From the NCBI GenBank assembly GCA_002269645.1, contig NIVC01001883.1, forward strand, positions 1 to 64,000: a stretch of DNA of 64,000 bases. The letters are read 5' to 3'. Position 1 is the first letter of the stretch; the number at the start of each line of letters is the position of its first letter. The notes beneath the pieces were generated by a model. That model saw only the letters and a list, made by a program, of their open reading frames with translations. It ran no database searches and was not told the origin of the DNA. The translations under genes and the position numbers were made by a program. Of this stretch, positions 38,348-59,687 are shown piece by piece. The stretch comes from Macrostomum lignano (lineage: Eukaryota).

Positions 38348-38353
38348 TTTATT
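38348..38353 (-). terminator. Probable poly(A) signal of the decarboxylase gene
   Basis: AATAAA about 160 nt downstream of the stop at 38510. Confidence 0.5.
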
Positions 38354-38509
38354 TTTAATTATACTAAATCCTAGATCCTGAAGAGCATAAAAAGGGCAAA
38401 ATGAGCTAAGTTGATCATCCATGCAGCAGAGAAAGCGTGATATTGAATACGTAACTTAAATGTATATAAATAAATATTATTCAGCCTGGGCCCTGGCTGG
38501 GTTGGCTGC

Positions 38510-41500
38510 TCAGTCGTGCACCTCCTCGGTTACTGAATCAGCAGATGGCACAGGTAGCTGCTCCAGCTGCTGCACCTTCTGCTGCTGCTGACGGTCACCG
38601 TCACCCGCTTTCTCATCGTCCTGCAGAAAAAGCGAGCGGGAGGGCGCGGCCTCGAGCTCCTCCTGAGTGAGCACCCGCACCGCATACTCCCCATCAATAT
38701 CGGCCAGTCCGTGCACCTCCACCGGCTTGTTGCCCTTCAGCAGCTTGGCCAGGTAGGACGTGATGGGTGGGGTGATCACCTGGCCTGGCACTAGCACCGG
38801 GATGCCGGGTGGGTAGGCCAGCACCTGGTCGCAGCAGACGCGGCCGGTAAGAGCCTCGTTCGGCCTGCGGATAGATAGCGGATGGGCGGGGTAGATAGCG
38901 GATGGTGGGGTAGATAGTGGATAGGCGGGGTAGATAGCGGATGGGCGGGGTAGATAGCGGATGGTGGGGTAGATAGTGGATGGGCGGGGTAGATAGCGGA
39001 TGGGCGGGGTAGATAGCGGATGGTGGGGTAGATAGTGGATGGGCGGGGTAGATAGCGGATAGGCGGGGTAGATAGCGGATAGGCAGGGTAGATAGCGGAT
39101 GGGCGGGGTAGATAGCGGATGGTGGGGTAGATAGTGGATAGGCGGGGTAGATAGCGGATGGGCGGGGTAGATAGTGGATAGGCGGGGTAGATAGTGGATA
39201 GGCGGGGTAGATAGCGGATGGGCGGGGTAGATAGCGGATGGGCGGGGTAGATAGCGGATGGGCGGGGTAGATAGCGGATGGTGGGGTAGATAGTGGATGG
39301 GCGGGGTAGATAGTGGATGGCGAGGTAGATAGTGGATAGGCGGGGTAGATAGTGGATAGGCGGGGTAGATAGTGGATAGGCGGGGTAGATAGTGGATAGG
39401 CGGGGTAGATAGCGGATGGCGGGGTAGATAGTGGATAGGCGGGGTTGGAGAGCGGGCGTGTCACTCACCGGCCATCATCGTCCAGCAGGTAGAGACACTC
39501 GCCCGACTCGTAGAAAGCGCTGCGCGGCAGGCAGGCCAGCCGGCTGAAGTGCGGCACCTCCGCCATGCGGTAGGACTGCTTCGGCACCCGGCGCCGGTCC
39601 TTGGCCAGGCGGAACATGGCGTCGCACAGGCGGGACACCTTGCTGCGGGTGGTGCCCACGCCCAGCAGCAGCGTCAGCGTGCTGAATGTCGACTTCTCGC
39701 CCTGGATGTTGTACTTGTCGAACAGCACCTGGCATTGATGGTCGGGAAGGTTTTACAATTCTGTATAGTCAGTGCATTCGACTTTTCTACTTTGATTCCT
39801 TAGGCGCGACACAAAGTTCTTTTTTTAATTTTACAGTGAGAATCCTTTCAAATCCAACAATGGAAACTCATATTCACTGACATCCCAAAGTGAGGACAAA
39901 AACTCGCTCAAATCCCACAAACCTGTTCCATCTCGTCGGCGCTGTAGCCGGACTTGGAGATGTCCACAGTCAGCTTGGTGGGGTCCAGCCGAACCCCGTC
40001 ATTGCGCACCTCATCGGGCAGGAGGTCGCCGATGTCCAGTACGCGGAAGACGCCGGTGGAGTTGATTTTCTGGCGAAGTTCAGCGCCCAGTTTGAGGATC
40101 CGGTCCAGCAGCTTGTAGCCCTCCATCATTGCCTGCTTCCGGCCAACGTCCAGGCTGGCGATGAGAGCATACTGTGGGCTCGTGGAGGCGTACATGTTGA
40201 AGTTCTCACGGAACAGGTGCTCGTCGAACTCCGGGTCGTTGACGTGGACCATGCTGGCCTGCGAGAAGGAGGTCAACGTCTTGTGGATGCTCTGCGTTAC
40301 GTAGTCGGCGCCGCACTCCAGCGCGGTGGGCCGGAAGGCCGGATGGAAGCGGGCGAAGGCGTACCAGGCCTCGTCAATGATCACCTGCGGGATTTGGTGG
40401 CGTTGGGAGCGCGGGTTCCGAAATTGCAAAGTGGCATCCCGGTTATGAAAGGTTCATGAGATGCTTTGAAACACATTGACTATAACAACGGCACCAAGCC
40501 GATTCAAGCGTTTAAAGGCAGCACTAAAGTACTCAGGCGGCATCCGTATAAACAAACCTTGATGCCGGCCTTGTGCGCAGCCTCAACAATGGGCTTCAGG
40601 TCGTACAGCATACCATCGTAGGTGCAGCAGGTGAGAATGAGCGCCTTGGCGTCCGGATTCTCCTTGATAGCCCGGTAGATGGTGGCCTTCGGCACAGGGC
40701 CGAAGATGCCGAACTCCCTGCACACGGAGGAGTCCAAGTAGACGGGCCGAGCGTCCGACAGGATCACGCCGTGGTGGACGGACTTGTGGCAGTTGCGGTC
40801 CAGCAGGAGCTTGTCGCCCGGGGCCAGCAGAGTCTGGAAGATGATCTTATTGGTGGTGGAGGTGCCGTTGGTGGCCAGATAGGTCTTGCGGGCGCCGAAG
40901 GCCGTGGCGGCCAGGTTCTGGGCGGTGGCGATGACCCCAGTGGGGTGCAGCAGCGAGTCCAGCATGGGCACGGAGACCGACAGGTCGGCCCTGAGCAGAT
41001 TCTCCCCCACGAACTCGTAAAAATCGCTGACCCAGGGCGAGTTCTTGAGCGAGTCGCCGCCAGAGTGACCGGGCGAGTGCCAGGAATCCTTGGCCATCTT
41101 CACATAGGCCTGCAGCGCATCGTAGAACGGCGTGGCGGACTTCTCGGCCAGCTCGGCGGACAGGATGCGGAACCAGCCGTGGTAGTCGGGCTCGTCCCGG
41201 TCGAAGTAGCCGTCCACGGCGTGGCTGACCAGCTCCTCCACCATGGCGCGCTCGTCATCGCTGAGCACAACATAGAGGGACAGCTCCGGCCGCCAGGAGT
41301 TGATGCGGTTGGCCAGGTCCAAGGCCGCCTGGCCGGGGCCGAGGCCGGCCAGCGACTTGTCAATCACCACCAGCTGCAGGTCGCCGTCCGCCTTCACCGT
41401 CTGCATGGCGTGGTCTCCGGTGCGCGCGGACACGAATGCGATGCCGAACGGGTTGTCAAGGCGAGCGCTGGCCGAGGCCAGGCCGCTCAGAGCCGGCTCC

Positions 41501-41559
41501 AGCCAGGCCGCGTCGTTGCTGACGACCAGCGCACGGCTTACCGGCTTTAGCGACGGCAT
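38510..41559 (-). CDS. Bacterial-type PLP-dependent Lys/Arg/Orn decarboxylase (AAT-fold, N-terminal receiver-like wing domain), 4 exons, 692 aa, intact
   Basis: Exons 41559-40558, 40384-39923, 39728-39469 and 38864-38510; all introns GT-AG and phases consistent (0,0,2). Motifs SWHSPGHSGG, RADLSVS..LDSLLHPTGVI, NGTSTTNK, LLDRNCHKSVHHG, TCCTYDG, IK|VIIDEAW, PLP-lysine TQSIHK, STSPQY, DPTKLT, YPPGIPVLVPG. Substrate is not assignable by eye. Confidence 0.93.
38868..39445. repeat. ~20-bp G-rich minisatellite (GGGCGGGGTAGATAGCGGAT)n filling decarboxylase intron 3
   Basis: Direct inspection. Confidence 0.95.
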
Positions 41560-41562
41560 GGC

Positions 41563-41590
41563 CTGCTGCGAGCAGCAGAAGGAGATTTGA
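41563..41590 (-). promoter_or_regulatory. 3' splice acceptor (NAGNAG) 3-6 nt upstream of the decarboxylase ATG; cis or SL trans-splice site
   Basis: Minus strand reads tcaaatctccttctgctgctcgcag|cag|gccATG. Confidence 0.6.
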
Positions 41591-41607
41591 GTCCGGCTCT
41601 GCCACTG

Positions 41608-42020
41608 CAGGGGTCTGGCTTTATTTACTGCTGGGGTCTGGCTTTATTTACTGCTGGGGTCTGGCTTTATTTACTGCAGGGGTCTGGCTTTATTTACTGC
41701 TGGGGTCTGGCTTTATTTACTGCTGGGGTCTGGCTTTATTTACTGCTGGGGTCTGGCTTTATTTACTGCTGGGGTCTGGCTTTGCCACTGCTGGGGTCTG
41801 GCTTTATTTACTGCAGGGGTCTGGCTTTATTTACTGCTGGGGTCTGGCATTATTTACTGCTGGGGTCTGGCTTTATTTACTGCTGGGGTCTGGCATTATT
41901 TACTGCTGGGGTCTGGCTTTATTTACTGCTGGGGTCTGGCTTTATTTACTGCTGGGGTCTGGCATTATTTACTGCTGGGGTCTGGCTTTATTTACTGCTG
42001 GGGTCTGGCTTTATTTACTG
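41608..42020. repeat. 23-bp minisatellite (GGGGTCTGGCTTTATTTACTGCT)n
   Basis: About 17 copies; most units contain AATAAA on the minus strand. Confidence 0.95.
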
Positions 42021-42034
42021 CTGGGATGGGGCCT

Positions 42035-42385
42035 GATTCCGCTGGGGTGGGGTCTGATTCTGCTGGGGTGGGGTCTGATTCTGCTGGGGGGGGTCTGATT
42101 CTGCTGGGGTGGGGTCTGATTCTGCTGGGGTGGGGTCTGATTCTGCTGGGGGGGTCTGATTCTGCTGGGGGGGTCTGATTCTGCTGGGGTGGGGTCTGAT
42201 TCTGCTGGGGTGGGGTCTGATTCTGCTGGGGGGGGTCTGATTCTGCTGGGGGGGGTCTGATTCTGCTGGGGTGGGGTCTGATTCTGCTGGGGAGGGGTCT
42301 GATTCTGCTGGGGGGTCTGATTCTGCTGGGGAGGGGTCTGATTCTGCTGGGGGGGTCTGATTCTGCTGGGGTGGGGTCTGATTCT
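42035..42385. repeat. ~21-bp G-rich minisatellite (GGGGTCTGATTCTGCTGGGGT)n
   Basis: Direct inspection; shares GGGGTCTG..CTGCTGGGG with the adjacent 23-bp array. Confidence 0.95.
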
Positions 42386-42502: not shown

Positions 42503-43436
42503 AATAAACAGGAATTAGCAAAATGGTGAATACAAAGCGGAATACTAGAGCGCGCCGGCTGCCGAAAACAGTATAGGGAAGTCGGCACTGGCAGGCATAA
42601 AATATAAGGCGTTTTCTATCCTAAATTGGAATCACGTAGAAAAATTTACATCATTTTTCTCCTTACGCATCACCCTACTACTATTAAGTAGGAATAAGTG
42701 AAAATAGAAATTAAAAAAAGGCGGAGGCCGCTGCCAGAGCCGGAAATGTTAATAAATGGAGACAGAGGAAGACGGTGACTCGAGTGCGGAATGAGCTGCT
42801 GGGCCCTGCCTCAGTTTACTGATAGGCTTGAATACAATAGAAACTAAACTGCTGAAAAAGTGGCTCTCAGTAAAACTCCTAAAGGTTCGTTGAGTTCAGT
42901 GCGATTGAAAAAGTTCACTGAAATGAGGCTCTGGGTGAGACGACACAACAGGACAGGGAGCTGCGCAATGCTGCTAATCGTGTATGGGATAAAGACTGAG
43001 TATGCTGAGTACAGTACGCTGAGCACGTGCAGTATGCACAGCAAATATACAGTATGCTGAGTAGCTGAGTAGCTCAGGCGGGCCGGGCAGCGCCAGTCTC
43101 AATTTTCTGCTTCATTCTCCGAGCCGCTGGTGCTGCTAAAGCGTTGTGGAGCCAAAGAGGAGCTTGGCCTGCGGGTTGCAATGGGGCGATTTGGGACCCG
43201 TCAATAAGATGTAAGCTGGTCAGACTGGCTGCGGAATTAGTCCATAAATTTGGCCTGCACAAAGCGGTAACTACTACTATAAATACGAGTTTGCTTAGAT
43301 GCGTGAACTCTGCAGGCTGGCGGCTTGAAATGGTTAGGCATGTGAGCGATAGGTTGGGGATAGACTTTGCGGCCAGGGAGGCCCTTCTACATGTACATGG
43401 AGTAGATAGCAACCAATTTACAGGTGCTGTGAGGCG

Positions 43437-46400
43437 CTAGGGTGAGCTAGGATTGACGCCACAGCTGCATCCTTGAGGTCCTCCACCTGAGCTCAGACCA
43501 CGTCCCGACCTGCGGCCGTTCGCAGAACGAGAAATCGCGGAAATCGGCGACGAACTTGAGCGGGGCCGGATGCGGAACCGGATGCGGAACCGGATGCGGA
43601 ACCGGATGCGGAACCGGATGCGGAACCAGATTCGTAACTGAATATGGAACTAGATCCGGAACCAGATACGGATCCGGAACCAGATACGGATACAGATACG
43701 GAACCAGATACGGATCCGGAACCAGATACGGATCCGGAACCAGATCCGGAACCAGATCCGGAACCAGATCCGGAACCAGATGCGGAACCAGATGCGGAAC
43801 CAACAGCGTCGATTGCCGGCAGTGGCGGCTGCAGTTATCAAAATTCAGCACCGATTATGAGTAAGTAGGATAAGAGAAATTAGAAAGAAGATTCTGGAGC
43901 TTGATTTGAGTCGCAATTTTGGTAAGCTACGGCAGAGAAATAAAAATTCTGCATCCGAGTTATGGATCCTCAGACAGCACGAATATTGGAATTAAAAAAA
44001 TCAAATGAGAAATTTCTGGCAAAAAACCATAATGCGATTATGACAAAGCAAGCCAATACGTAGTAAGAAAGCACTACTTCGAGTAGGACATCAGGGCACG
44101 GCAAAGTGTGCAATCCGACAACATAAACAGAAACGATTCCGATTTCCATCTTCCTCTACTGTAAGTAGGCTTTTCAGAATAAAATAACAAACAATCGACC
44201 ATTTCTCAGGCCAATTGAATCGGCAAAAAAACTACAAATCGCTGCAAAACAGTTCGCCCCGCCCTGCCCGCATGTTGCGGACTTGCGCGTCCACCTGGCC
44301 GGGGCTCACCTGGCCCACCTACCTCTGGCCAAGCCGGTCGAACTTCCTAGACAGCGACGGCGAGCGCTTCTGCTTGAATTGGTGCGCGGGTTTTCGGGCT
44401 AAACAGGCTGGGCGAGGACTTGCACACTGCTGGCTAATTGGCTAATTGGCTAATTGGCTAATTGGCTAATTGCTTGATTGGCACAACACCCGGGAGCAGC
44501 GTGCGGTGGCTCAAAGAAGCAAAATGGAACATAAAAATCAATTTTTCTCTTCAAAACCCAAGGTTGAAAAAGAAACAGTGGCAATGAGAAGGAACTGGAG
44601 CAAACCGAGCACAACACATTCTAGTAAAACAAAAGGTGCAGTTTTCTGTTTAAATGTAACCGAATACCAAATTAAAAGTGGAAGAGTGCCGGAGGGAGCT
44701 TTTCTTTACCGTCATCTCGTCCACGGGAATGCTGGACCAGCTCCTCAGGCTGGGGGTGAAGTAGCGAGGGTGGGAGGATGAGAGACGCTCACACACAAAC
44801 ACAGACACACACTCTAGTCACACATTCACATAAACTAATCATATAATCATACAATTCACACAAACTAGTCACACATTCACAAAACTATTCACAAATTCAC
44901 ACAAACTAGTCACACATTCACACAAACTAGTCACACATTCACAAAAACTAGTCATGCATTCACACAAACTAGTCACATATTCACACAAAATAGTCACACA
45001 TTCACACAACTAGTCACACATTCACACAAACTAGTCACATATTTACACAAACTAGTCACACATTCACACAAACTAGTCACAAATTCACACAAACTAGTCA
45101 AATATTCACAAAAACTAGTCACACATTCACACAAACTAGTCACATATTCACACAAAATAGTCACACATTCACACAACTAGTCACACATTCACACAAACTA
45201 GTCACATATTCACACAAACTAGTCACACATTCACACAAACTAGTCAAATATTCACACAAACTAGTCACAAATTCACACAAACTAGTCAAATATTCACACA
45301 AACTAGTCACACATTCACACAAACTAGTCACATATTCACACAAACCAATCAACGCGCAATCACACAAGCCGTGTGACGCACCTCATCGAGACGGTGGCAG
45401 CCACCTGAATGCTGGTGACAGATGCGAAGTCAAGCTGAAAAGGCCGGGCGGTTTCTTAGAATTGAGAAACCCGCTAGCAACTGTCCTGCCATTCGCTGGA
45501 TTCACATCAAGTTAAATGCCAAATATGTCAGGTGCGAGCTCAGGCGTGGATTTATTAATATTGAAACACAGGAAAAATGTACTTTAATTGGCACAAATAA
45601 TTGGATGCGCAGAAATTCTACGAGCAATTTGGGGCAAATATCAGATACTACACATGACAGCAATAGCTGCCTGTTAGGGTGGTGAGTTATCACATCACTG
45701 GTTAGAACGAGCTAATATAAATATGAATTAAAACTGACCTTATGGACAATGGACAATGAGATTAACAAAGACTATGGACAGTGAGATGAACAAAGGCTAT
45801 GAACAGTCGGATAAACAAAGAATATGAATAGTGAGTTGAAAACAAATACTATGGACAGTGAGATGAACAAAGACTATGGGCAGGGAGAGGAACAAAGACT
45901 ATGGGCAGGGAGAGGAACAAAGACTATGGACAGTGAGATGAACAAAGACTATGGACAGTGAGATGAACAAAGACTTATGAACAGTCGGATGAACAAAGAA
46001 TATGAACAGTGAGTTGAAAACAAAGACTATGGACAGTGAGATGAACAGATTATGGACAGTGAGATGGAATCGATACAGTACTAGACAAAGGATTTGCAGC
46101 CCTAAAACGCAGGGATCTGTGATCTCAGAAACTCCGAAGCCGGACTCACCTCGCCCTTGTTCGGCAGGTTCACCCGGGCGTAGATGAGCAGCGCCACGTC
46201 CCGGTGCCCGGACGCCATGGCGATGGAGAGCGCCGTGGAGCCCTCGTTATCCTCCAACTCCGTGGATGTCTGCGGCCGGGCCAGCAGCTCCCTGGCGCAC
46301 TCCAGATTGCCGTGCTCGGCGGCAAACATCAAAGCCGTGGAGCCCTCGTCGTCCTGGGCGTTCGGATCGGCGCCGGCCTCCAGCAGCAGCCGCAGGATGG

Positions 46401-46696
46401 CCAGGCGGCCGTGGCTGGCGGACAGCATCAGCGCCGTGTGACCCACCGAGGTCGCCTTTCTGTTGACGTCGCTGCGGCGAAGGAGGTCGCGAAGGGTCTC
46501 CCGACCTTCGGCGTCCTCGTCGGACAGGTGGCTGAGGCCGGTGAGCATGGCGGCCGAGTAGCCCGACAGGTTGCTGCGGTCCGCGTCCGCCCGGCCGGCG
46601 GCCAGCAGGACTCGAACCACCGACCAGCGGCCGTGGCTGACGGAGTAGTGCAGGCTGGTGTTGCCCTGCGGCGGGGAGGGCAGGACGGGCAAGGAT

Positions 46697-46738
<42 letters not shown>

Positions 46739-46863
46739 TGGACAGACAGACAGACAGACAGACAGACACACAGACAGACAGACAGACAGACAGACAGGCA
46801 GACAGGCAGACAGACAGACAGACAGACAGACACTAAGACAGACAGACAGACAGACAGACACTA

Positions 46864-46908
<45 letters not shown>

Positions 46909-46935
46909 CTAAGACAGACAGACAGACAGACAGAC

Positions 46936-46968
<33 letters not shown>

Positions 46969-46971
46969 CTA

Positions 46972-47020
<49 letters not shown>

Positions 47021-47023
47021 GGC

Positions 47024-47056
<33 letters not shown>

Positions 47057-47059
47057 GGC

Positions 47060-47112
<53 letters not shown>

Positions 47113-50100
47113 TCCCATGTACATAAAGGGCCAGCCAAGGTGTTAATTAAACACGGGCACAATGCTCTGAAGAAGCAGCTGTGCGGAAATTCTGCAAAGT
47201 AATTTCAGAGCCCGAACTGTGATAATCCAATCACCGAGGGAGAGAGTTGGTGAAATAAAATTGATGCGGGGAGAGGCTAAGCAGCCGGCACCTGTGCGGG
47301 TTGCAATTGCTGTGCCAGGGTGCGCTGTATAGCGCGGAGCAGCTTACGGAAACTGCCAGCGATTGCCGGTTGCCTGCAGATCGACATGACGGGTGCGCAA
47401 TTTCAGCCGATTCACTCAAGCCATAATTGATGTTATAAACGATCATTTTTGTTACAGTTTGCATTACTAATAATAATAACAATAACTATTACTAATACTA
47501 AAATACTGATAAGCAAATAATAATTATTGCACATATCGTATGCTCAAGAAGCATTATTTTATCGAAATCTACGTGTACATTGCTATGCTAAATTTTATTC
47601 TACTCTAAATCTACTCTATGAATTCTATTAGACAATCATCCTAGTGTAGCGTATCCTACTTTTATTCTATCCTATTCTACCCTATCCTACTCTATCCTAT
47701 CCTACTCTACCCTATCCTACTCTATCCTATCCTACTCTATCCTATCCTACTCTATCCTATCCTACTCTGTCCTATCCTACTCTGTCCTATCCTACTCTGT
47801 CCTATCCTACTCTGTCCTATCCTACTCTATCCTATCCTACTCTGTCGTCCTATCCTACTCTGTCCTATCCTACTCTGTCCTATCCTACTCTATCCTATCC
47901 CACTCTGTCCTATCCTACTCTATCCTATCCTACTCTGTCCTATCCTACTCTGTCCTATCCTACTCTGTCCTATCCTACTCTGTCCTATCCTACTATGTCC
48001 TATCCTACTCTGTCGTCCTATCCTACTCTGTCCTATCCTACTCTGTCCTATCCTACTCTATCCTATCCCACTCTGTCCTATCCTACTCTATCCTATCCTA
48101 CTCTGTCCTATCCTACTCTGTCCTATCCTACTCTGCCCTATGTCCTATCCTACTCTGTCCTATCCTACTCTGTCCTATCCTACTCTGCCCTATGTCCTAT
48201 CCTACTCCAGCTCTATTCTCTATTCTACACAAGCGCATATTCCAATCAACTTGAACATGACTGTGAAAGCCGCAGTTCCGAACAAGGAAGCGCAGAGTGA
48301 ATGCATGCCAATGCAATGCACAATCTGGCCAATAAGCCACGGAGCTGCGCAAGTCACGCAAGCTCAGTGCACTGCAGCGGCTATTGCGCATTCGCGGTGC
48401 ACAGAATGCATGCCCTTTATCTGTTTGTGACAGATAGGAGATAAAAGAGAGTAAGCTTTGGGCAGATATTTTGCCATTGACAAACTGCACGGACTCCGTT
48501 CATTTCAGACCCGTCAATGGGGGCAAGAGTCCGGCCGCTTTATTTATAGGGGGAAGGGGCCCAAGCCAGCTGCAAATGCTTGCAGAGGGATTCGATGCTT
48601 AATGAATTGATGACGCTGAGAACCAATATAATGGCAGCACATTGGAGAGTCAGGGAGGGGCAGCAGCCACTGAAGAATCAGGGAGGGGGCAGCAGCCACT
48701 GAAGAATCAGGGAGGGGGCAGCAGCCACTGAAGAATCAGGGAGGGGCAGCAGCCCATTGGAGAGTCAGGGAGGGGGCAGCAGCCTATTGGAGAGTCAGGG
48801 AGGGGCAGCAGACACAGGAGAGTCAGGGAGGGGGCAGCAGCCTATTGGAGAGTCAGGGAGGGGGCAGCAGCCACAGGAGAGTCAGGGAGGGGCAGCAGCC
48901 ACAGGAGAGTCAGGGAGGGGCAGCAGCCACTGGAGAGTCAGGGAGGGGGCAGCAGCCTATTGGAGAGTCAGGGAGGGGGCAGCAGCCACAGGAGAGTCAG
49001 GGAGGGGCAGCAGCCACAGGAGAGTCAGGGAGGGCAGCAGCCACTGGAGAGTCAGGGAGGGGCAGCAGCCACTGAAGAATCAGGGAGGGGGCAGCAGCCA
49101 CTGAAGAATCAGGGAGGGGCAGCAGCCACAGGAGAGTCAGGGAGGGGGCAGCAGCCACTGAAGAATCAGGGAGGGGCAGCAGCCACTGAAGAATCAGGGA
49201 GGGGCAGCAGCCACAGGAGAGTCAGGGAGGGGCAGCAGCCACTGGAGAGTCAGGGAGGGGCAGCAGCCCATTGGAGAGTCAGGGAGGGGGCAGCAGCCAC
49301 TGGAGAGTCAGGGTCAGGAGTCACTGACACTTACATTGTCATCGGCCATGTTGACGACTTTGTCCAGCAGGTGCTCGGACTTGGCAGCGAAGTAATCGCA
49401 GTAGGCCTTCACCTGGCTGGCGCTGGCCTCGCGGACGCTGCTGACGCGGAACCAGTCGCGGCGGATCAGCGACAGGGCGTCGTTCTGTGGAGGGGCAGCG
49501 CGCTTTATGGATTAGAGCGCAGCTTTTAAAAATATCCCATCCTACTGTTTTCCCACGTATTCTCCGAAACTCACGTTCGTAAGTTTTCCTTTTAGAGCAA
49601 AATCCATCCTCTGGGCTTCCCAATCGACAAATCCCATCCTCTGGGCTTCCCAATCGACAAATCCCATCCTCTGGGCTTCCCAATCGACAAATCCCATCCT
49701 CTGGGCTTCCCAATCGACAAATCCCATCCTCTGGGCTTCCCAATCGACAAATCCCATCCTCTGAGTTTCCCATTCGACAAATCCCATCCTCTGGGTTGTC
49801 GAATCAACAAATCCCATCCTCTGAGTTTCCCATTCGACAAATCCCATCCTCTGAGTTTCCCATTCGACAAATCCCATCCTCTGAGTTTCCCATTCGACAA
49901 ATCCCATCCTCTGAGTTTCCCATTCGACAAATCCCATCCTCTGAGTTTCCCTTTCGACAAATCCCATCCTCTGAGTTTCCCATTCGACAAATCCCATCCT
50001 CTGAGTTTCCCTTTCGACAAATCCTATCCTCTGAGTTTCCCAATCGCCAAATCTCATCCTCTGGGTTTCCCATTCGACAATCCCATTCTCAGGTTTCCCA

Positions 50101-53100
50101 TTGGAAAAGTTCAGTTGTCAGAAATTCAGAGAGTCATACATTTTTTCCTAGTGCTAAACTTAATTCCTCCCCAGATATTTCAATATTTGAAGCGTTGAAT
50201 CGCTCCAACTCTGAAGATCCCACAGGAAATGTTCCCATTCCAAAACTTCCAAGCATCCGAAGCTTGCAAGCCGCCAGGACCCGTCAGTAAACGGGAGCAT
50301 GCACAGTGCGGGGAGCAATAGTACTTTTGTTAAAACTGTGCAGCTGGGCAGTGCAGTTAAACTACAGTTGAACAAAGCGGAAGTCCCTCATCAATTATCG
50401 GACTCGGCTCTGTTTTAAACAAATAATTGCTTTATCGATCCTGATAGCTAAACGGCAATTTAAAACAAACAATAAAATGAATGCTGCATAATCTTGATTG
50501 TAAACAGATTATTGTCGGTGCAGATAAGTCCTGCTTCAACTGTATGATACATTTAGTAACTATGGTAAATAGTCCGTTGCTAGGGCCTCAGCGGCCCATT
50601 GCTGCTGGGGTAAAATTTAACGGCAGTCTTTATAGTAAAAACATAAAAATTCAGGATAAAGTGAGCGGAAATGGTTTTTTCTTGTCCATCCTAGGGTGAG
50701 TTGCAAGTTCGTGGCTGCCGACTGTCCACTGGCTGTCAGGAGTATCAATTGATCAACCACTGGCTGTCAGGAGTATCAATTGATCAACCACTGGCTGTCA
50801 GGAGTATCAATTGATCAACCACTGGCTGTCAGGAGTATCAATTGATCAACCACTGGCTGTCAGGAGTATCAATTGATCAACCACTGGCTGTCAGGAGTAT
50901 CAATTGATCAACCACTGGCTGTCAGGAGTATCAATTGATCAACCACTGGCTGTCAGGAGTATCAGTTGATCAACCACTGGCTGTCAGGAGTATCAATTGA
51001 TCAATCACTGGCTGTCAGGAGTATCAATTGATCAACCACTGGCTGTCAGGAGTATCAATTGATCAACCACTGGCTATCAGGAGTATCAATTGATCAACCA
51101 CTGGCTGTCAGGAGTATCAATTGATCAACCACTGGCTGTCAGGAGTATCAATTGATCAATTATTCACTGTCTGGGGTACAGCAAGATCTCAGTGAGGCGG
51201 GCAGGCCCTGTGATGCCAGCAGCAGCCAGCGTGGGAGTCGCAGGACGCGCTGTGCACCAGCATCCGCTGCTGCTGCTGGCGGCGCCCGCGCTGCTGCCGG
51301 TGCTGCCAGTGGCAGCAGTCCCGGCGAATTGCCGAACGCTGACGCTCCATCAGCAGCTCCTCCTGGTTGAATATTCGAGAAATTCACAGCTTACGAGTGA
51401 AAATCGAGTTTTCACTTCGAATGCCTACTGGAGATCAATCGCAGAGTTCCGTGCGAAATTTTGAAGCGCAGTTGGCCGACGAAGATTTTGGCAGACATGG
51501 ATATACTTAGACGGCTGCCATCCTAGCATGTACACACCCCAACAGGTACCCATCCCAACAGGTACCCATCACAACAGGTACACACCCCAACAGGTAGCAT
51601 TCCAACAGGTACCCATCACAACAGGTACCCATCCCAACAGGTACCCATCACAACAAGTACCCATCACAACAGGTACCCATCACAACAGGTACCCATCACA
51701 ACAGGTACCCATCACAACAGGTACCCATCACAACAGGTACCCATCACAACAGGTACCCATCATACCCATCACAACAGGTAGCATCCCAACAGGTAGCATC
51801 CCAACAGGTACCCATCCCAACAGGTACCCATCACAACAGGTACCCATCCCAACAGGTACCCATCACAACAGGTACCAATCCCAACAAGTACCCATCACAA
51901 CAGGTACCCATCACAACAGGTACCCATCACAACAGGTACCCATCACAACAGGTACCCATCACAACAGGTACCCATCACAACAGGTAGCATCCCAACAGGT
52001 AGCATCCCAACAGGTAGCATCCCAACAGGTAGCATCCCAACAGGTAGCATCCCAACAGGTAGCATCCCAACAGGTAGCATCCCAACAGGTAGCATCCCAA
52101 CAGGTAGCATCCCAACAGGTAGCATCCCAACAGGTAGCATCCCAACAGGTAGCATCCCAACAGGTAGCATCCCAACAGGTAGCATCCCAACAGGTACCCA
52201 TCACAACAGGTACCCATCACAACAGGTACCCATCGCAACAGGTACACATCACAACAGGTACCCATCCCAACAGGTAATCGCTCCAACGAGCAATCACCAC
52301 ATCAGTCACCCAGACTCCTCACAGCTTCATCACTCACCAGCTCGGCGGCGCTGACACCGGTCGAGTCGTGCCGCCAGGCCTCGTAGGTCGAGCAGGCCTT
52401 CTCGACATCTTGCGGCACCTGCAGCGGCGCTGGCGAAGGCGACAACTGCGAAGCGGCCTCTACGCCGGCGGCGCTGCCTTCGGATTCGAACGCCGAGGCA
52501 GACGCGGCCTCCTCGCCGCGCTCGTACAGCAGCTCGATGCGCCCGTCGGCCCCGAAGTAGCTGCCCTCGATCGGGCTGCCCACCATGTCGTCGTCGTCGT
52601 CTTCGTCGTCCAGGTCGTCGTCGTCGGCGGAGCTGCTCGATGGCGACCTGAGGGGCAGGGATTTCGACAAGGGGACTGGGGATTCGTTTGAGGTGAGACT
52701 GCACCATCAATCACACCCCGCACACCTTCACACCCCGCACACCTTCACACCCCGACCCTTCACACCCCGACCCTTCACACCCCGACCCTTCACACCCCGA
52801 CCCTTCACACCCCGACCCTTCACACCCCGACCCTTCACACCCCGACCCTTCACACCCCGACCCTTCACACCCCGACCCTTCACACCCCGACCCTTCACAC
52901 CCCGACCCTTCACACCCCGACCCTTCACACCCCGACCCTTCACACCCCGACCCTTCACACCCCGACCCTTCACACCCCGACCCTTCACACCCCGACCCTT
53001 CACACCCCGACCCTTCACACCCCGACCCTTCACACCCCGACCCTTCACACCCCGACCCTTCACACCCCGACCCTTCACACCCCGACCCTTCACACCCCGA

Positions 53101-56100
53101 CCCTTCACACCCCGACCCTTCACACCCCGACCCTTCACACCCCGACCCTTCACACCCCGACCCTTCACACCCGACCCTTCGCATCCGCAAACCTTCACAC
53201 CTCAACCCTTCATCACCACGATTCACACCCCAGCCCACCACATTCACTCAATTCTAATTGTTTCATTTAGACAACTGATTGAAGCCAGAGCTGGTTGCTC
53301 AGCAGCGGGAGAATCGGCAAGGCACAAGCGGAGCGGCAGTGAGTCACCGCAGACGGCGAGTCCGCATGGCGAAGCTGTTTCAAATTGGCCAGAATCAGCC
53401 AGCCCGCCGGCACAAAAATGGGACAGAGAGAGAAAACTGCGCTGTACCAAAACTGACTGAGCTTTCACTGCTCACATGCTTTTAGGCCACTTTCGCCTAG
53501 CAGGGCAATTAACCACCGACTCGAGACCGAGTGCTGAGATTATGAGTCAGAATGCTGAAGCACTGGGCTGAGATTGGGAGGGCAGGCTGAGGTTGGGAGG
53601 GCAGGCTGAGATTGGGAGGGCAGGCTGAGATTGGGAAAGCAGGCTGAGATTGGGAAAGCAGGCTGAGGTTGGGAGGTCAGGCTGAGATTGGGAGGACAGG
53701 CTGAGGTTGGGAGGGCAGGTTGAGGTTGGGAGGGCAGGCTGAGGTTGGGAGGGCAGGCTGAGGTTGGGAGGGCAGGTTGAGGTTGGGAGGGCAGGCTGAG
53801 GTTGGGAGGGCAGGCTGAGGTTGGGAGGGCAGGCTGAGGTTTAGAGGTCAGGCTGAGGTTGGGAGGGCCGGCAAGGCGCTCACCCGCCAACAACGTCAGG
53901 CTGAAACCTGACGCCCTTCTTGGAGTCCCGCGACCGCTGCTCGGCGGGGTCCGGCCGGTTCCGCTTCAGGATGGAGCGCGGGCTGCCCGGAGACGCCAGG
54001 GCGCCGGCAGCGGCGGCAGCCTCGGCGACGGAAAATTGGTGAATCGGCGAGTCAGTGCCGGCGCCAGGTGGCATCTGCGTGCGCGCGTAGCCGGCGGTGT
54101 CGGGCAGCGGCCGGCCGGGCTGTGGGTGAATCGCTGGACGGCCGGCCGGTTCCGGAAGCGTCGGCAGGGACTGCTCCAGCGGCGGAGTCGGCGGGGTGGG
54201 CGGCGAATCGGTGCCAGGGGAGTCGGGGATGGCGGCGACATCCGTAGTGACAGTCAGCGGCCAGGCGGGGCCGCAGGCGACGCTGTGCTGCAGCAGAGAC
54301 CGCTCGGGCGAGGTGAACTGGTCGCGCAGCTGCGGCCTGGGAAAAGAGGAAACAGCCACTGAATGTAAGGACAGCTGCGGGTCGGACTCAGTTCCGCCCA
54401 TGCTTATCTCATAGCATCTCTGCTATCCCATAGCATCTCTGCTTATCTCATAGCATCTCCGCTATCCCATAGCATCTCCGCTTATCTCATAGCATCTCTG
54501 CTATCCCATAGCATCTCTGCTTATCTAATAGCATCTCCGCTTATCTCATAGCATCTCTGCTATCCCATAGCATCTCTGCTTATCTCATAGCATCTCCGCT
54601 ATCCCATAGCATCTCCGCTTATCTCATAGCATCTCTGCTATCCCATAGCATCTCTGCTTATCTCATAGCATCTCCGCTTATCTCATAGCATCTCTGCTAT
54701 CCCATAGCATCTCCGCTTATCTCATAGCATCTCTGCTATCCCATATCATCTCCGCTTATCTCATAGCATCTCCGCTTATCTCATAACATCTCCACTTATC
54801 TCATAGCATCTCCGCTTATCTCATAGCATCTCCGCTTATCTCGTCTCCTACCGCTTGAACATGGCGCCCGCCCCTTTTACCTGCAGGTGTTGGTGGCGGC
54901 CTCAAAGTTGTGCAGCCGCTCAGTGAAGGCGAACTTGTTAGCCGCAGCCGGCCGGCACTGCACCGCGGCCTCCGCAGATTTCGTCCGCGCGACTGACGAG
55001 TCGTCGTTGTCTCCGCCGACGCAGCGCGACACCATCAGGCCGGAGCCGGTGGCAGCCGAGGTCGACGCCGTGTCCGGCCGCGCCTGGGAAGCGGCGCTCT
55101 TCACGTCACGGCGAAGAAGTTCGCCGACAAGCTGGGCGAGCTCGCCGGCGCCAAGACCGTAGCTGCGGCGGAGCTGCCGGATTTGCGTCTGGACGGACTG
55201 GCGGCGGTGCACCAGCGTCAGACCCAGCAGACTCGCTGGCAGAGCAAAGAGAAAACCCAGTTAGTGTAACTGCATCAGGACTAGTAGCGAAAGATACTGA
55301 CACAGCGGCACTGCACACACTGACACAGCGGCACTGCACACACTGACACAGCGGCACTGCACACACTGACACAGCGGTGCCTGAAGACTCTAGCAGACAC
55401 CAAACACCCTCACCTTCAGCAGCTTCCGAAGCTTCGTCGACATCGTCAGCGGCATCCAGCGTGGAGACAGCGGCATCGACCAGCGCAGCCGTCGTCCGGT
55501 CGTCGAAGTCGCACGCGTCGAGGCCGACTGAGCGGCGCTCCGGTGGCGCGGCGCAGAAGCTGAGAGACACGTCGCGACAGGCGGGTCGCGCAGTGACGCC
55601 TGCGTGCCGACGACCGGCGCCGCTGCGCCGCCGGCTCCGCTCGTCCTGCTGCTCTGGCGCCGCGTCGGTGCCGACGCACTGATCGACGCCGGGGGCTTCG
55701 TCAGATCGGCAGTCGGCCTGCTGGCTGGCGTCCGCGGTGGGCATAACGGCGACCGCGCAGTCCACGGCAGCATCCTGGCAGGTCGGCCGGGCCTGGGCGG
55801 CGGCCGTCGTCAGCTGCGGCCGACACTCGGAGATTGCGTCGACAACCTCGACGGCGGTGCTTGCGGCCGACGACGTGGACTGCTGAACGGGCGGCTCTTC
55901 GACCGCTTCGGTCTCCGTGGCAATGCAGGACAGCGCGACACGTTCAGTTTCCGAGGCAACGTGCGAGCGGCCGACATCGTCAGTTGCTATGGCTACGCTA
56001 GTAAACGTGGCGGCATCTGTCAGCATTGAAGTGCTGATATACTTTAGTGCCATTGTCTCCATGGCAACGTCGCGAAAGAATTGACGCTCGGTTTCAATGG

Positions 56101-59100: not shown

Positions 59101-59687
59101 AGCAAATCCTCCTGCTGCTCCTGCGGCTGCCGAGGCGGAGGCGACAGGGTTGAGTTTTCCCGACGTCCGCTGACGCTGTGAGGCCGCCGACTTTGCCGCG
59201 GCGGCTGACGTTCAGCGGAGGCCTCCTCTGAGGCTTCCAGCTGTTGATACGGCTGCACCGTCAGTCGCCGCTGGGTGGTGCCAAAAGTGGCGAATGTGTC
59301 CTGATCCTTGGGGTCTGGCCGCGGAGCTGGCGACGGCGACAGCGGCGACATGGGCGAGCCGCTGGTCAAGGAGGTGAGCTCGTCGATGAGGTCCTGCACG
59401 CTGCCGCCGCCTGTGGAGGCTGAGGGTCCCACTGGCCCGCGCAGGCCCGAAGCTGGCGGCGGCGGCGGCGGCTTGCGTCGATCCGGGACGGCGCCGACGC
59501 TGCCACCGCGGGCGCGTCGGCGGGCTGGACGGGCGGCGCCATTGGCGCCACTAGGAGAGGGGCTGCCAGCGTTCACAGAGCGCGCGAAGCTCACAAAGCT
59601 GCTGTCGATGTGGTAGCCGAAGGGGCAGCAGCTGCAGCGGTGGCTGTCAGCAGGGCCGGAACTGCGGGCCCCGACTGACTGCATCAT
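43437..59687 (-). CDS. KANK: KN motif and ankyrin repeat domain protein (KANK/vab-19 family), 10 exons, ~1544 aa
   Basis: Phase-consistent GT-AG exons: 59687-59057, 57444-55414, 55235-54881, 54336-53884, 52647-52338, 49484-49335, 46665-46150, and tentatively 44749-44710, 44398-44323, 43509-43437. KN motif CCPFGYHIDSSFVSF; RSILK..KKGVRF..GG plus acidic tract; RDWFRVSS..VVNMADDN|GNTSLHYSVSHG; ankyrin repeats GHTALMLSASHG, GSTALMFAAEHG, GSTALSIAMASG. The last three exons are less certain. Confidence 0.9.
43565..43800. repeat. 12-bp minisatellite (GGAACCRGATSC)n, KANK intron 9
   Basis: Direct inspection. Confidence 0.9.
44815..45345. repeat. 19-bp minisatellite (CACATTCACACAAACTAGT)n, KANK intron 7
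   Basis: Direct inspection. Confidence 0.92.
45740..46060. repeat. ~25-bp repeat (GAACAAAGACTATGGACAGTGAGAT)n
   Basis: Direct inspection. Confidence 0.85.
46696..47110. repeat. (GACA)n microsatellite next to the ankyrin-exon acceptor
   Basis: Direct inspection. Confidence 0.97.
47655..48205. repeat. 15-bp minisatellite (CCTATCCTACTCTGT)n
   Basis: Direct inspection. Confidence 0.95.
48645..49310. repeat. ~28-bp minisatellite (GCAGCAGCCACTGGAGAGTCAGGGAGGG)n
   Basis: Direct inspection. Confidence 0.95.
49595..50090. repeat. 30-bp minisatellite (ATCCCATCCTCTGAGTTTCCCATTCGACAA)n
   Basis: Direct inspection; two sub-variants (GGGCTTCCCAAT and GAGTTTCCCATT) occur in blocks. Confidence 0.95.
50725..51158. 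repeat. 31-bp minisatellite (CCACTGGCTGTCAGGAGTATCAATTGATCAA)n
   Basis: About 13 near-identical copies, each containing the palindrome ATCAATTGAT. Confidence 0.95.
51528..52275. repeat. 15-16-bp minisatellite (CAACAGGTACCCATCA / CAACAGGTAGCATCC)n
   Basis: Direct inspection. Confidence 0.95.
52712..53190. repeat. 15-bp minisatellite (CACACCCCGACCCTT)n
   Basis: Direct inspection; highly homogeneous. Confidence 0.97.
53563..53865. repeat. ~19-bp G-rich minisatellite (GGGAGGGCAGGCTGAGGTT)n
   Basis: Direct inspection. Confidence 0.93.
54402..54842. repeat. ~20-bp minisatellite (TATCTCATAGCATCTCCGCT)n
   Basis: Direct inspection. Confidence 0.93.
55298..55380. repeat. ~23-bp repeat (TGACACAGCGGCACTGCACACAC)x3-4 in the 178-nt KANK intron 2
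   Basis: Direct inspection. Explains the out-of-character CVQC segment in ORF 55106..57346. Confidence 0.85.
57582..58645. repeat. 25-29-bp minisatellite (GGGCACTGCTAGCCTGATCTGTACAGGAA)n, KANK intron 1
   Basis: About 38 copies; constant 21-bp core with a few recurring linkers. Confidence 0.97.

What the first reader, a model, noticed from the sequence alone, without database searches (positions are those of the whole stretch)
38510..41559. Intronised bacterial-type Lys/Arg/Orn decarboxylase in an animal genome: candidate domesticated horizontal gene transfer
Seen: an intact 692-aa ORF over four exons with canonical GT-AG introns, embedded in host repeats next to KANK, with a poly(A) signal and host-like GC-rich codons. 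It has the full architecture of a wing-containing AAT-fold (fold type I) basic amino-acid decarboxylase: wing, PLP domain (DEAW, TQSIHK) and C-terminal YPPGIP domain. Established: this family (CadA/LdcC/AdiA/SpeC/SpeF/LdcA type) is essentially prokaryotic; animals make putrescine with the unrelated fold type III ODC and lack a canonical lysine or arginine decarboxylase of this fold. Inference: an old bacteria-to-animal transfer under purifying selection that may give the host cadaverine or agmatine synthesis, an antizyme-independent polyamine route, or acid/oxidative-stress resistance.
Basis: partly seen in the sequence, partly recalled or inferred. Interest (0 to 1): 0.92.

Follow-up and report, generated by a model that had tools for sequence, protein, structure and literature searches.

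The report
Bacterial decarboxylase gene in a flatworm
The flatworm Macrostomum lignano carries, next to its own KANK gene, a working-looking gene for a vitamin-B6-dependent amino-acid decarboxylase that it took from a betaproteobacterium, then gave three introns and duplicated; which amino acid the enzyme acts on is still unknown.

Summary
On the minus strand, 41559..38510, four exons joined by three GT-AG introns encode an intact 692-aa protein with an OKR_DC_1 domain (Pfam 3.8e-101), an OKR_DC_1_C domain and a CheY-like wing.

The window is Macrostomum lignano. The protein is exactly GenBank PAA62975.1 (Mlig029890.g3, "hypothetical protein"). Two 99%-identical copies lie on other long contigs, with the same introns and the same upstream KANK-like gene. 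A fourth, 77%-identical paralogue ("type B") exists in UniProt.

The nearest relatives are 652-aa proteins of Chromobacteriaceae-type betaproteobacteria (72-76% identity). In a bootstrapped NJ tree the flatworm copies group together (100%) and sit beside two bacterial sequences (99%).

Exon junctions are seamless against the bacterial proteins, and no other donor gene was transferred. Selection is purifying: omega is about 0.22 among the recent copies, and there are about 4-fold fewer changes at bacterially invariant sites between the old paralogues.

So a bacteria-to-animal transfer that was then domesticated is well supported.
- GC-rich codons do not separate host from donor.
- The protein belongs to an uncharacterised subfamily, not to CadA, LdcC, AdiA, SpeC or SpeF.
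- Its closest solved relative, Rv2531c, is a glutamate decarboxylase, so the substrate is open; a basic amino acid is favoured.

I found no paper reporting this transfer.

The parts
40558..41559 (-). Exon 1 (ATG at 41559..41557). Codes aa 1-334: the CheY-like wing (aa 8-141), a linker, and the first half of the PLP domain, including H258-K259 (CHK) and NGTST.
40385..40557 (-). Intron 1: 173 nt, GTTTGT..CAG, phase 0. It is identical in all three paralogous copies. It sits at an AAG|GT proto-splice site that is already present in the bacterial homologues.
39923..40384 (-). Exon 2, aa 335-488. Contains DEAW (D338), TQSIHK (PLP lysine K369 at 40282..40280) and YASTSP (Y399 replaces a His conserved across the family).
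39729..39922 (-). Intron 2: 194 nt, GTTTGT..CAG, phase 0. It is 995/996 nt in paralogues g1 and g2.
39469..39728 (-). Exon 3, aa 489-575 (first two bases of codon 575). Includes E499 of the 'EK' motif.
38865..39468 (-). Intron 3: 604 nt, GTGAGT..CAG, phase 2. It is almost entirely a 20-nt tandem array (38872-39445). It is 746 and 811 nt in the paralogues.
38510..38864 (-). Exon 4, aa 575-692 plus the stop (38512..38510). Contains YPPGIPVLVPGQ. The last 39 aa (38629..38513) are an extension beyond the bacterial stop and have low model confidence.
38348..38359 (-). ATTAAA and AATAAA poly(A)-signal hexamers, 151-162 nt after the stop, in a 35% GC flank.
   Evidence: This is a weak consensus match only.
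41560..41585 (-). Pyrimidine-rich tract plus CAGCAG ending 3 nt before the ATG (..CTCCTTCTGCTGCTCGCAGCAG|GCCATG). It is a candidate 3' splice or SL trans-splice acceptor.
   Evidence: The g2 CDS is annotated 5'-partial, starting exactly at GCC. The published SL-acceptor motif [T/C]TNCAG (PMC8629364) is only partly matched. This is an inference.
41604..42385 (.). Two tandem arrays (23-nt and 21-nt units) directly upstream of the gene. On the sense strand the 23-nt unit carries AATAAA (14 copies, the last 66 nt before the ATG).
43074..59687 (-). Upstream host gene, KANK-like. Exons seen: an N-terminal exon, a large exon 57346-55106, an ankyrin exon 46665-46147, and small 3' exons down to 44319 or 43074. 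The same neighbour lies upstream of all three decarboxylase copies.

Best explanation
This is one of three near-identical copies (Mlig029890.g3) of a Macrostomum lignano nuclear gene descended from a single ORF. The ORF was acquired horizontally from a Chromobacteriaceae-like betaproteobacterium.

**Shown.**
- Only the decarboxylase ORF was integrated. In the donor family it sits between a DinG-like helicase gene and argF-argG.
- It landed downstream of a KANK-like gene.
- In the animal it gained three spliceosomal introns. At least one sits at a pre-existing AAG|GT site.
- It lost the bacterial stop, adding 39 aa.
- It duplicated early into two lineages (A and B, about 23% diverged). Lineage A was triplicated recently with the surrounding chromosome block.
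- The protein keeps the full winged fold-type-I architecture and every PLP and catalytic residue I could map.
- It has evolved under purifying selection inside the animal.

**Inferred.**
- It is a cytosolic, active PLP-dependent amino-acid alpha-decarboxylase.
- The substrate is most likely a basic amino acid (ornithine or arginine, or lysine), giving a diamine or agmatine. This rests on three things: it keeps the acidic E499 and the FSQASM serine typical of Lys/Orn/Arg enzymes; it lacks the arginines that Rv2531c uses for glutamate; and its bacterial orthologues sit next to argF-argG.
- It is transcribed and spliced as predicted, possibly through an acceptor 3 nt upstream of the ATG.
For: **Identity.** The protein is an exact match to PAA62975.1. 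Copies g1 and g2 lie on 369-kb and 359-kb contigs.

**Structure across copies.** Intron positions are identical, the ORFs are intact and the flanks are collinear in all three copies.

**Bacterial origin.** The only hits above 76% identity are M. lignano. The next hits are Chromobacterium, Gulbenkiania, Aquitalea, Pseudogulbenkiania and Vogesella at 70-76%. The contigs holding the closest hits are plainly bacterial.

**NJ bootstraps.**
- Type A with P0003/P0004: 92.5%.
- With type B added: (A,B) 100% and (A,B,P0003,P0004) 99%.

**Single transfer.** A and B share 9 residues absent from all 123 bacterial sequences. They are changed at 8 of the same 223 invariant columns, where about 0.9 would be expected by chance.

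**Exon junctions** are gap-free against the bacterial proteins.

**Selection.**
- Among g1-g3 there are 9 synonymous and 6 nonsynonymous events, omega 0.22, binomial p=0.004.
- A-B differences are 16/223 at invariant columns against about 133/424 at variable columns.

**Catalytic residues conserved.** H258, K259, D338, W341, S366, H368, K369 and S401-T402.

**Fold.** AF2 and Foldseek support it.

**Glutamate determinants absent.** Rv2531c R576, R718 and N731 correspond to S375, M486 and E499 here (PMC13506015).

**Donor synteny** with argF-argG.

**Expression.** The annotation pipeline is RNA-seq based (PMC5730564).
Against: - No RNA-seq reads, enzyme assay or genomes of other Macrostomum species could be examined.
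- The flatworm branch is about 2.2 times longer than its bacterial sister.
- It carries 14 changes at columns invariant in 123 bacteria (5 or fewer in any bacterium). These include T367I, two residues before the PLP lysine, and H399Y at a His conserved in LdcI, LdcC, LdcA and Rv2531c. Activity or specificity may therefore have shifted.
- The bacterial subfamily itself is uncharacterised. NCBIfam scores fall far below all curated cut-offs.
- Gene context is a poor predictor of substrate in this family: ldcA of Pseudomonas is in the arginine regulon but decarboxylates lysine (PMC6257575).
- The omega estimate rests on only 15 substitutions.
- The tree is NJ with a simple distance correction.
- Type B is known only from old gene models, without DNA.
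Confidence: 0.8

Rival explanations
1. The transfer is real and the enzyme is functional, but the substrate is not Lys, Arg or Orn. It could be glutamate (giving GABA) or another amino acid, so the gene gives the worm something other than a polyamine route.
For: - The closest solved structure by sequence is Rv2531c (274 bits, against 229 for LdcA). Rv2531c decarboxylates L-glutamate and no basic amino acid (PMC13506015).
- The same paper argues that most clusters of IPR000310 have unknown substrates.
- The subfamily fails all curated Lys/Arg/Orn family cut-offs.
- The core is shorter than in the classical extended enzymes.
- There are animal-specific changes near the active site, T367I and H399Y.
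Against: - The residues proposed to bind the glutamate side chain in Rv2531c (R576, R718, N731) are S, M and E here, as in the Lys/Orn/Arg enzymes.
- The protein lacks the extra N-terminal domain of Rv2531c.
- The bacterial orthologues are adjacent to argF-argG.
Confidence: 0.2
2. The transfer is real, but the gene is a transcribed relic or has lost catalysis. It would then be neutral or neofunctionalised as a non-enzyme.
For: - The branch is accelerated (0.20 against 0.09 substitutions per site).
- There are 14 changes at bacterially invariant sites, several shared by or recurrent in both paralogues.
- There is no direct expression or activity data.
Against: - At least four intact copies exist.
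- Omega is 0.22.
- There are 4-fold fewer A-B differences at invariant sites.
- All mapped PLP and catalytic residues are kept in type A.
- The splice sites are conserved.
Confidence: 0.1
3. Types A and B come from two independent transfers from similar donors, rather than one transfer followed by duplication.
For: A-B identity (77%) is no higher than the identity of either to the nearest bacterium (76%).
Against: - (A,B) has 100% bootstrap support.
- Nine residues are shared that are absent from all 123 bacterial sequences, against 3 in control pairs.
- Four identical derived states fall at invariant columns: G269D, R318L, S372T and H399Y.
- Conflicting gene models of type B around ELQQ|ILFERF hint at an intron at the same place as intron 2.
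Confidence: 0.07
4. The gene is bacterial contamination or a chimeric assembly.
For: Protein identity to bacteria is high (76%) and GC3 is bacterial-like.
Against: - Three spliceosomal introns interrupt the ORF.
- The same host flanks occur on three separate contigs of 197-369 kb.
- No other bacterial gene is in the 64-kb window.
- The nearest bacterial DNA is only 77% identical.
Confidence: 0.01
5. The gene is an ancient eukaryotic gene inherited vertically and lost elsewhere.
For: Some eukaryotes (plants, Paulinella, apicomplexans) have members of this Pfam family (PMC8503589, PMC13506015).
Against: - The gene nests within one betaproteobacterial family at 72-76% identity.
- The outgroup Nitrosospira-type sequences are separated with 99-100% support.
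- The eukaryotic members described in those papers are of different forms, either short or with an added N-terminal domain.
Confidence: 0.01

Closest known systems
Uncharacterised 652-aa winged OKR_DC_1 proteins of Chromobacteriaceae and Burkholderiales (e.g. Chromobacterium phragmitis, Gulbenkiania mobilis, Aquitalea magnusonii; variously labelled 'ornithine decarboxylase', 'arginine decarboxylase' or 'aminotransferase class I/II-fold PLP-dependent enzyme')
   Same: - 66-76% identity over the full length, and collinear with them.
- Same three-domain architecture.
- All but 14 of 223 invariant residues are kept.
   Different: - The flatworm gene has three introns, 3 extra N-terminal residues and a 39-aa C-terminal extension.
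- It shows an accelerated rate.
- It has changes at T367, H399, G269, R318, P544, D558 and P591.
- It has a host genomic context instead of helicase | dc-argF-argG.
Mycobacterium tuberculosis Rv2531c (PDB 9N0O/9N0N/9N0P), an L-glutamate decarboxylase of the 'KOR' superfamily
   Same: - It is the best solved-structure match by sequence (1.6e-80).
- It has a REC-like domain, a PLP core and a C-terminal domain.
- H-K (CHK), STHK-type lysine and STSP motifs are shared.
   Different: - Rv2531c has an extra N-terminal domain of about 200 aa (947 aa in total).
- It has R576, R718 and N731 where the flatworm protein has S375, M486 and E499.
- Identity is only about 28-31% (PMC13506015).
[quoted passage not shown]
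   Same: - Same Pfam domains and fold.
- Full-length Foldseek alignments at E of about 1e-36.
- Conserved PLP lysine, stacking His, Asp-Trp, FSQASM and YPPG motifs.
   Different: - Identity is 21-26%.
- NCBIfam scores are 200-241 bits against cut-offs of 794-1310.
- The flatworm and betaproteobacterial core is shorter, because the classical enzymes carry insertions (PMC8503589).
Other bacteria-to-animal transfers of metabolic genes that acquired introns (as known from bdelloid rotifers, plant-parasitic nematodes, insects and mites; e.g. PMC4011162, PMC11258130)
   Same: - A single bacterial ORF is integrated among host genes.
- Introns were gained.
- The gene was duplicated.
- It is under purifying selection.
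   Different: - The recipient is a free-living flatworm.
- The gene is a winged fold-type-I decarboxylase, not reported in animals in the literature I could search.

Membership tests
Pfam OKR_DC_1 / winged (extended) AAT-fold PLP decarboxylases | Major PLP domain (PF01276) above the gathering score | tested here: met
   339.3 bits against a cut-off of 27, model positions 1-417 of 417.
Pfam OKR_DC_1 / winged (extended) AAT-fold PLP decarboxylases | C-terminal domain (PF03711) | tested here: met
   34 bits against a cut-off of 24.2. The YPPGIPVLVPGQ motif is present.
Pfam OKR_DC_1 / winged (extended) AAT-fold PLP decarboxylases | N-terminal CheY/REC-like wing domain | tested here: met
   Not significant by Pfam (Response_reg E=0.19, no OKR_DC_1_N hit). 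The AF2 model gives a (beta-alpha)5 fold for aa 8-141 at pLDDT of about 90, and full-length Foldseek alignments to winged enzymes.
Pfam OKR_DC_1 / winged (extended) AAT-fold PLP decarboxylases | PLP-binding lysine and cofactor-binding residues (LdcI K367, H245, D330, W333, S364, H366, T398/T399; roles recalled from the LdcI literature) | tested here: met
   K369, H258, D338, W341, S366, H368 and S401/T402 by HMMER alignment. Neighbouring T365 is I367 and H396 is Y399.
Pfam OKR_DC_1 / winged (extended) AAT-fold PLP decarboxylases | Decarboxylase activity on Lys, Arg or Orn | not testable with these tools
   Needs an enzyme assay.
Curated LdcC / CadA / AdiA / SpeC / SpeF families (NCBIfam) | Score above the curated family cut-off | tested here: not met
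   Scores against cut-offs: LdcC 241 vs 968; CadA 222 vs 1056; SpeF 203 vs 1310; AdiA 201 vs 1167; ODC 200 vs 794.
Rv2531c-type L-glutamate decarboxylases | Additional N-terminal domain (four-domain, about 950-aa form) | tested here: not met
   The protein starts directly with the REC-like domain. It is 692 aa, and the alignment to Rv2531c begins at its residue 230.
Rv2531c-type L-glutamate decarboxylases | Positively charged or neutral side-chain pocket (R576, R718, N731) | tested here: not met
   The aligned residues are S375, M486 and E499 (PMC13506015).
Domesticated bacteria-to-animal horizontal gene transfer | Nested within a bacterial clade | tested here: met
   NJ bootstraps of 92.5-100%.
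Domesticated bacteria-to-animal horizontal gene transfer | Physical linkage to bona fide host genes, and spliceosomal introns | tested here: met
   KANK-like gene, LINE element and polyprenyl-synthetase exon in the same window. Three contigs share the flanks. There are three GT-AG introns.
Domesticated bacteria-to-animal horizontal gene transfer | Absent from other animals | tested here: inconclusive
   Only M. lignano appears among eukaryotes in three searches of 5.8 billion proteins. That collection shows no Logan-derived M. lignano members either, so its coverage of flatworm data is doubtful.
Domesticated bacteria-to-animal horizontal gene transfer | Transcribed and correctly spliced | tested here: inconclusive
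   Indirect only. The GenBank product equals my spliced product exactly, and that annotation was built from RNA-seq with StringTie, TBONE and TransDecoder (PMC5730564). No reads were seen.
Domesticated bacteria-to-animal horizontal gene transfer | Purifying selection after transfer | tested here: met
   Omega 0.22, p=0.004. A-B differences are 7% at invariant columns against 31% at variable columns.
SL trans-spliced downstream gene of a flatworm operon | Same-strand upstream gene within 1 kb (repeat-adjusted), and an SL acceptor at the 5' end | tested here: inconclusive
   From the KANK CDS end (43074 or 44319) to the ATG is 1.5-2.8 kb, or about 0.7-1.7 kb without tandem repeats. A CAG acceptor lies 3 nt before the ATG, and the g2 CDS is 5'-partial. 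The [T/C]TNCAG motif is only partly matched.

The most novel reading that the evidence does not exclude
The promoter-less bacterial ORF may have become expressible because it landed at the 3' end of the KANK transcription unit. It would then be matured as the downstream cistron of an operon by spliced-leader trans-splicing at the CAG 3 nt before its ATG. The M. lignano leader ends in ...ATG, in frame with GCC-ATG.

If so, SL trans-splicing acted as the capture mechanism for a horizontally transferred gene. The enzyme also belongs to an uncharacterised winged subfamily, and its product in the worm could be an amine other than the classical polyamines.
Probability: 0.3. Interest if true: 0.75.

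Novelty: new member of a known kind. Interest (0 to 1): 0.62.

Why it matters
- **Rarity in this phylum.** Well-documented transfers from bacteria into animals are still few outside rotifers, nematodes and arthropods. I found none reported for Macrostomum.
- **Quality of the case.** It has introns, host linkage on three contigs, an old and a recent duplication, and a selection signature.
- **Testability.** M. lignano has RNAi, in situ hybridisation and transgenesis, so function can be tested directly.
- **Biochemistry.** It is the first winged fold-type-I amino-acid decarboxylase seen in an animal. It belongs to a subfamily whose substrate is unknown even in bacteria, so characterising it would annotate thousands of bacterial genes too.
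- **Possible physiology.** If it makes putrescine, agmatine or cadaverine, the worm has an amine route outside the usual ODC-antizyme control.
- **Mechanism of capture.** If the gene is expressed through an SL-resolved operon, it shows how foreign ORFs can become expressed in animals.

Tried and rejected
- **Codon usage and GC3 as a test of amelioration.** Rejected. Host exons and donor-like genes are equally GC3-rich (RSCU r 0.93 against 0.94).
- **Scan of 185,579 prokaryotic genomes with the flatworm protein.** The peptide patterns chosen were flatworm-specific, so it returned only 59-68% relatives (Nitrosospira, Burkholderiales MAGs). These served as outgroups but did not find the donor.
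- **Remnants of donor neighbours in the window (helicase, argF, argG and others).** None found by tblastn or blastn.
- **Orthologues in other species, or transcript-derived fragments, using an exon-1 query.** This found only a second M. lignano paralogue. Its DNA is not on record, so I could not compute intron positions or dN/dS between A and B.
- **Look-up of the UniProt 99% variant P0001.** It has no contig.
- **Literature and supplements.** Searches for 'Mlig029890', 'DRR199168', and Macrostomum with HGT or decarboxylase returned nothing relevant.
- **Rfam and tRNA scans of the window.** Empty.
- **Pfam on the isolated N-terminus.** Not significant. The wing rests on the structure model.
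- **Origin of the samples holding the closest bacterial contigs (DRR199168, ERR10767065).** Could not be determined.
Full report
**1. What is in the sequence**

The feature lies on the minus strand. Four exons give a 2079-nt reading frame of 692 codons with no internal stop:
- 41559..40558
- 40384..39923
- 39728..39469
- 38864..38510

The three introns are 173, 194 and 604 nt. They start GTTTGT, GTTTGT and GTGAGT, and all end in CAG. Intron 3 is almost wholly a 20-nt tandem array.

Pfam finds the complete Orn/Lys/Arg decarboxylase major domain (3.8e-101, aa 143-518) and the family's C-terminal domain.

The N-terminal 'wing' is not significant by sequence. An AlphaFold2 model built on 34 homologues gives a confident (beta-alpha)5 CheY-like fold for residues 8-141. 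Foldseek aligns the whole chain to LdcI, Rv2531c, AdiA, LdcC, LdcF, LdcA and ODC at E of about 1e-36.

ATTAAA and AATAAA lie 151-162 nt after the stop.

**2. Whose genome it is**

The spliced protein is, residue for residue, GenBank PAA62975.1, 'hypothetical protein BOX15_Mlig029890g3' of the free-living flatworm Macrostomum lignano.

Copies g1 and g2 lie on two other contigs of assembly GCA_002269645.1, 369 kb and 359 kb long. In both:
- the ORF is intact;
- the three introns are at identical positions, though intron 2 is 995/996 nt and intron 3 is 746/811 nt;
- a KANK-like ankyrin gene of about 1525 aa sits directly upstream on the same strand.

The window also holds:
- the KANK exons;
- a polyprenyl-synthetase exon;
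- a LINE-type RT/RNase H element, which is absent from the g1 contig;
- many tandem arrays.

There is no tRNA and no Rfam hit. Contamination or chimerism is excluded for practical purposes.

**3. Where the gene came from**

In a search of 5.8 billion proteins, the only hits above 76% identity are M. lignano entries. Next come:
- 652-aa proteins of Chromobacterium, Gulbenkiania, Aquitalea, Pseudogulbenkiania and Vogesella (70-76%);
- then Ideonella, Leptothrix and other Burkholderiales (65-68%).

The two closest (P0003, P0004; 76%) sit on ordinary bacterial contigs. Their order, DUF3579 - DinG-like helicase | decarboxylase - argF - argG, is the same as in Chromobacterium and Pseudogulbenkiania. 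Their ArgG is 90-94% identical to those genera.

I built a neighbour-joining tree of 124 sequences (647 columns, 200 bootstraps), with Nitrosospira-type sequences as outgroup. It joins the flatworm protein to P0003/P0004 at 92.5%.

Against bacterial homologues the alignment has no gap at any exon junction. The flatworm protein differs in four ways:
- 3 extra N-terminal residues;
- a one-residue deletion;
- a one-residue insertion;
- a 39-aa extension past the bacterial stop.

Only the ORF was transferred. No trace of the donor's neighbours is in the window, and nucleotide similarity (77%; third codon positions 61%) starts at codon 2 and fades near the bacterial stop.

Intron 1 sits at an AAG|GT site already present in the bacterial genes. 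This is what intron gain at a proto-splice site looks like.

**4. A second, older paralogue**

An exon-1 query turned up UniProt A0A1I8HG80 and A0A1I8FRD5 of M. lignano ('type B'). These are 77% identical to the window's 'type A' and 76% identical to P0003.

Several results point to a common ancestor after a single transfer:
- A and B group at 100% bootstrap, and (A,B,P0003,P0004) at 99%.
- They share nine residues found in none of 123 bacterial sequences; control pairs share three.
- Both are altered at 8 of the same 223 bacterially invariant columns, where about 0.9 would be expected by chance.
- Four of those changes are to the same residue: G269D, R318L, S372T and H399Y.

The best reading is one transfer, then an early duplication, then the recent triplication of type A. 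The recent triplication matches the known redundancy of this assembly (PMC5730564). This gives real time depth, so 'old' is fair. How old needs other Macrostomum genomes, which I could not search.

**5. Is it maintained?**

Among g1-g3 there are 9 synonymous and 6 nonsynonymous changes. Omega is 0.22, and the binomial p against neutrality is 0.004.

The A-B comparison is more telling. That divergence happened inside the animal, yet it hits only 16 of 223 columns (7%) that are invariant in bacteria, against about 31% of variable columns. The bacterial constraints are therefore still acting.

All mapped cofactor residues are present: H258-K259, D338, W341, S366, H368, K369 and S401-T402.

Against this:
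- the flatworm branch is 2.2 times longer than its sister;
- it carries 14 changes at invariant columns, where no bacterium has more than 5;
- these include T367I next to the PLP lysine, and H399Y at a histidine conserved in LdcI, LdcC, LdcA and Rv2531c.

The specificity or kinetics may have shifted.

**6. Expression**

I could not see reads. However, the Mlig_3_7 gene set was made from RNA-seq (StringTie/TACO, TBONE cutting at trans-splice and poly(A) sites, TransDecoder; PMC5730564). Its product equals my conceptual splice exactly. This is indirect evidence that the three junctions are used.

The g2 CDS is annotated 5'-partial and begins at the GCC directly after ..CTCCTTCTGCTGCTCGCAGCAG|. 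This suggests the mature 5' end lies at a 3' splice site 3 nt before the ATG.

Other points bear on an operon:
- The M. lignano spliced leader ends in ATG (PMC8629364) and would be in frame.
- The KANK coding end lies 1.5-2.8 kb upstream, or about 0.7-1.7 kb once tandem arrays are removed.
- The 23-nt array just upstream carries AATAAA in 14 units on the sense strand.
- An older gene model (UPI0007A2439E) even fuses KANK and the decarboxylase.

An SL-resolved KANK-decarboxylase operon is thus a live hypothesis. It is not shown, and the acceptor matches the published [T/C]TNCAG motif only in part.

**7. What the enzyme does**

It is a member of the Pfam family and has the winged architecture. 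It is not a member of any curated Lys, Arg or Orn family: NCBIfam scores are 200-241 bits against cut-offs of 794-1310.

The core is shorter than in the classical extended enzymes, which carry insertions relative to it (PMC8503589).

The closest solved structure by sequence is M. tuberculosis Rv2531c. In 2026 that protein was shown to decarboxylate L-glutamate and none of Lys, Orn or Arg. The same authors argue that most clusters of this superfamily have unknown substrates (PMC13506015).

Mapping their determinants onto the flatworm protein:
- R576, which forms a salt bridge to the gamma-carboxylate, is S375 here, within FSQASM as in LdcI.
- R718 is M486.
- N731 is E499, within the 'EK' motif of the basic-substrate enzymes.
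- The extra N-terminal domain is absent.

Together with the argF-argG linkage in the donor family, this favours a basic amino acid, ornithine or arginine first. The Pseudomonas ldcA precedent shows that such context can mislead: that gene is in the arginine regulon yet is lysine-specific (PMC6257575). I put a basic substrate at about 55-65%.

**8. Comparison and novelty**

The kind of event is known from rotifers, nematodes and arthropods: a bacterial metabolic ORF integrated into an animal genome, intronised, duplicated and kept.

What is new here:
- the recipient, a model flatworm;
- the gene, a winged fold-type-I decarboxylase, described in the literature as confined to Bacteria and a few Archaea, with plant, Paulinella and apicomplexan exceptions of other forms (PMC6257575, PMC8503589, PMC13506015);
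- the apparent absence of any published account.

The gene model itself is already public as a hypothetical protein.

**9. Verdict**

It is a solid, testable, moderately surprising finding, not a categorically new one.

Noticed in passing
window 28389-33765: A non-LTR (LINE-type) retrotransposon of about 5.4 kb with an intact 813-aa RT/RNase H ORF (28479-30920, minus strand). It is absent from the otherwise collinear paralogous contig L002, so it is a copy-specific and probably recent insertion.
   Followed up: partly
window 8500-11200 and 13500-16100: A tandem duplication of about 4.95-4.98 kb at 97-100% identity. It carries identical 396-aa low-complexity Ser/Leu-rich ORFs (9368-10558 and 14345-15535), with a third, related partial copy near 12167-12952.
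   Followed up: partly
window 41604-42385: The 23-nt tandem array directly upstream of the decarboxylase start has AATAAA on the sense strand in 14 units, the last 66 nt before the ATG. It might terminate KANK transcripts just before a trans-splice acceptor, as in nematode operons.
   Followed up: partly
UniProt A0A1I8FRD5 / A0A1I8HG80 (P0244, P0128); not in the window: A second M. lignano decarboxylase paralogue (type B), 77% identical to the window's copy. It shares derived residues with the window's copy and has T233A in the NGTST phosphate loop. It is known only from the older assembly's gene models, and no DNA is available here.
   Followed up: partly
UniParc UPI0007A2439E (P0002); window 41560-46665: An older gene model joins the KANK ankyrin exons, three small downstream exons (45437-45384, 44751-44707, 44426-44322) and the decarboxylase into one 1129-aa protein. 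This is either a mis-prediction or a trace of read-through transcription.
   Followed up: partly
window 38510-41559 compared with L002 and L003: Eight of the nine synonymous differences among the three copies are C/T or G/A changes at third positions. Synonymous divergence (1.4% for g3-g1) exceeds that of intron 1 (0%) and of the 3' flank (0.4%). This may reflect decay of the very high GC3, or CpG mutation.
   Followed up: no
window 39729-39922 compared with L002 11638-12632: Intron 2 is 194 nt here but 995/996 nt in the two paralogues, an indel of about 800 nt. Intron 3 array length also differs (604, 746 and 811 nt).
   Followed up: partly
window 5377-5961 (minus strand): An exon of a polyprenyl (decaprenyl-type) diphosphate synthase (Pfam 9.6e-45), another ordinary host gene in the window.
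   Followed up: no
L001, L025, L026, L028: In Chromobacteriaceae the orthologous decarboxylase always sits between a divergently transcribed DinG-like helicase gene and argF-argG. In Ideonella (L027) it follows a KefB-type K+/H+ antiporter gene instead.
   Followed up: partly
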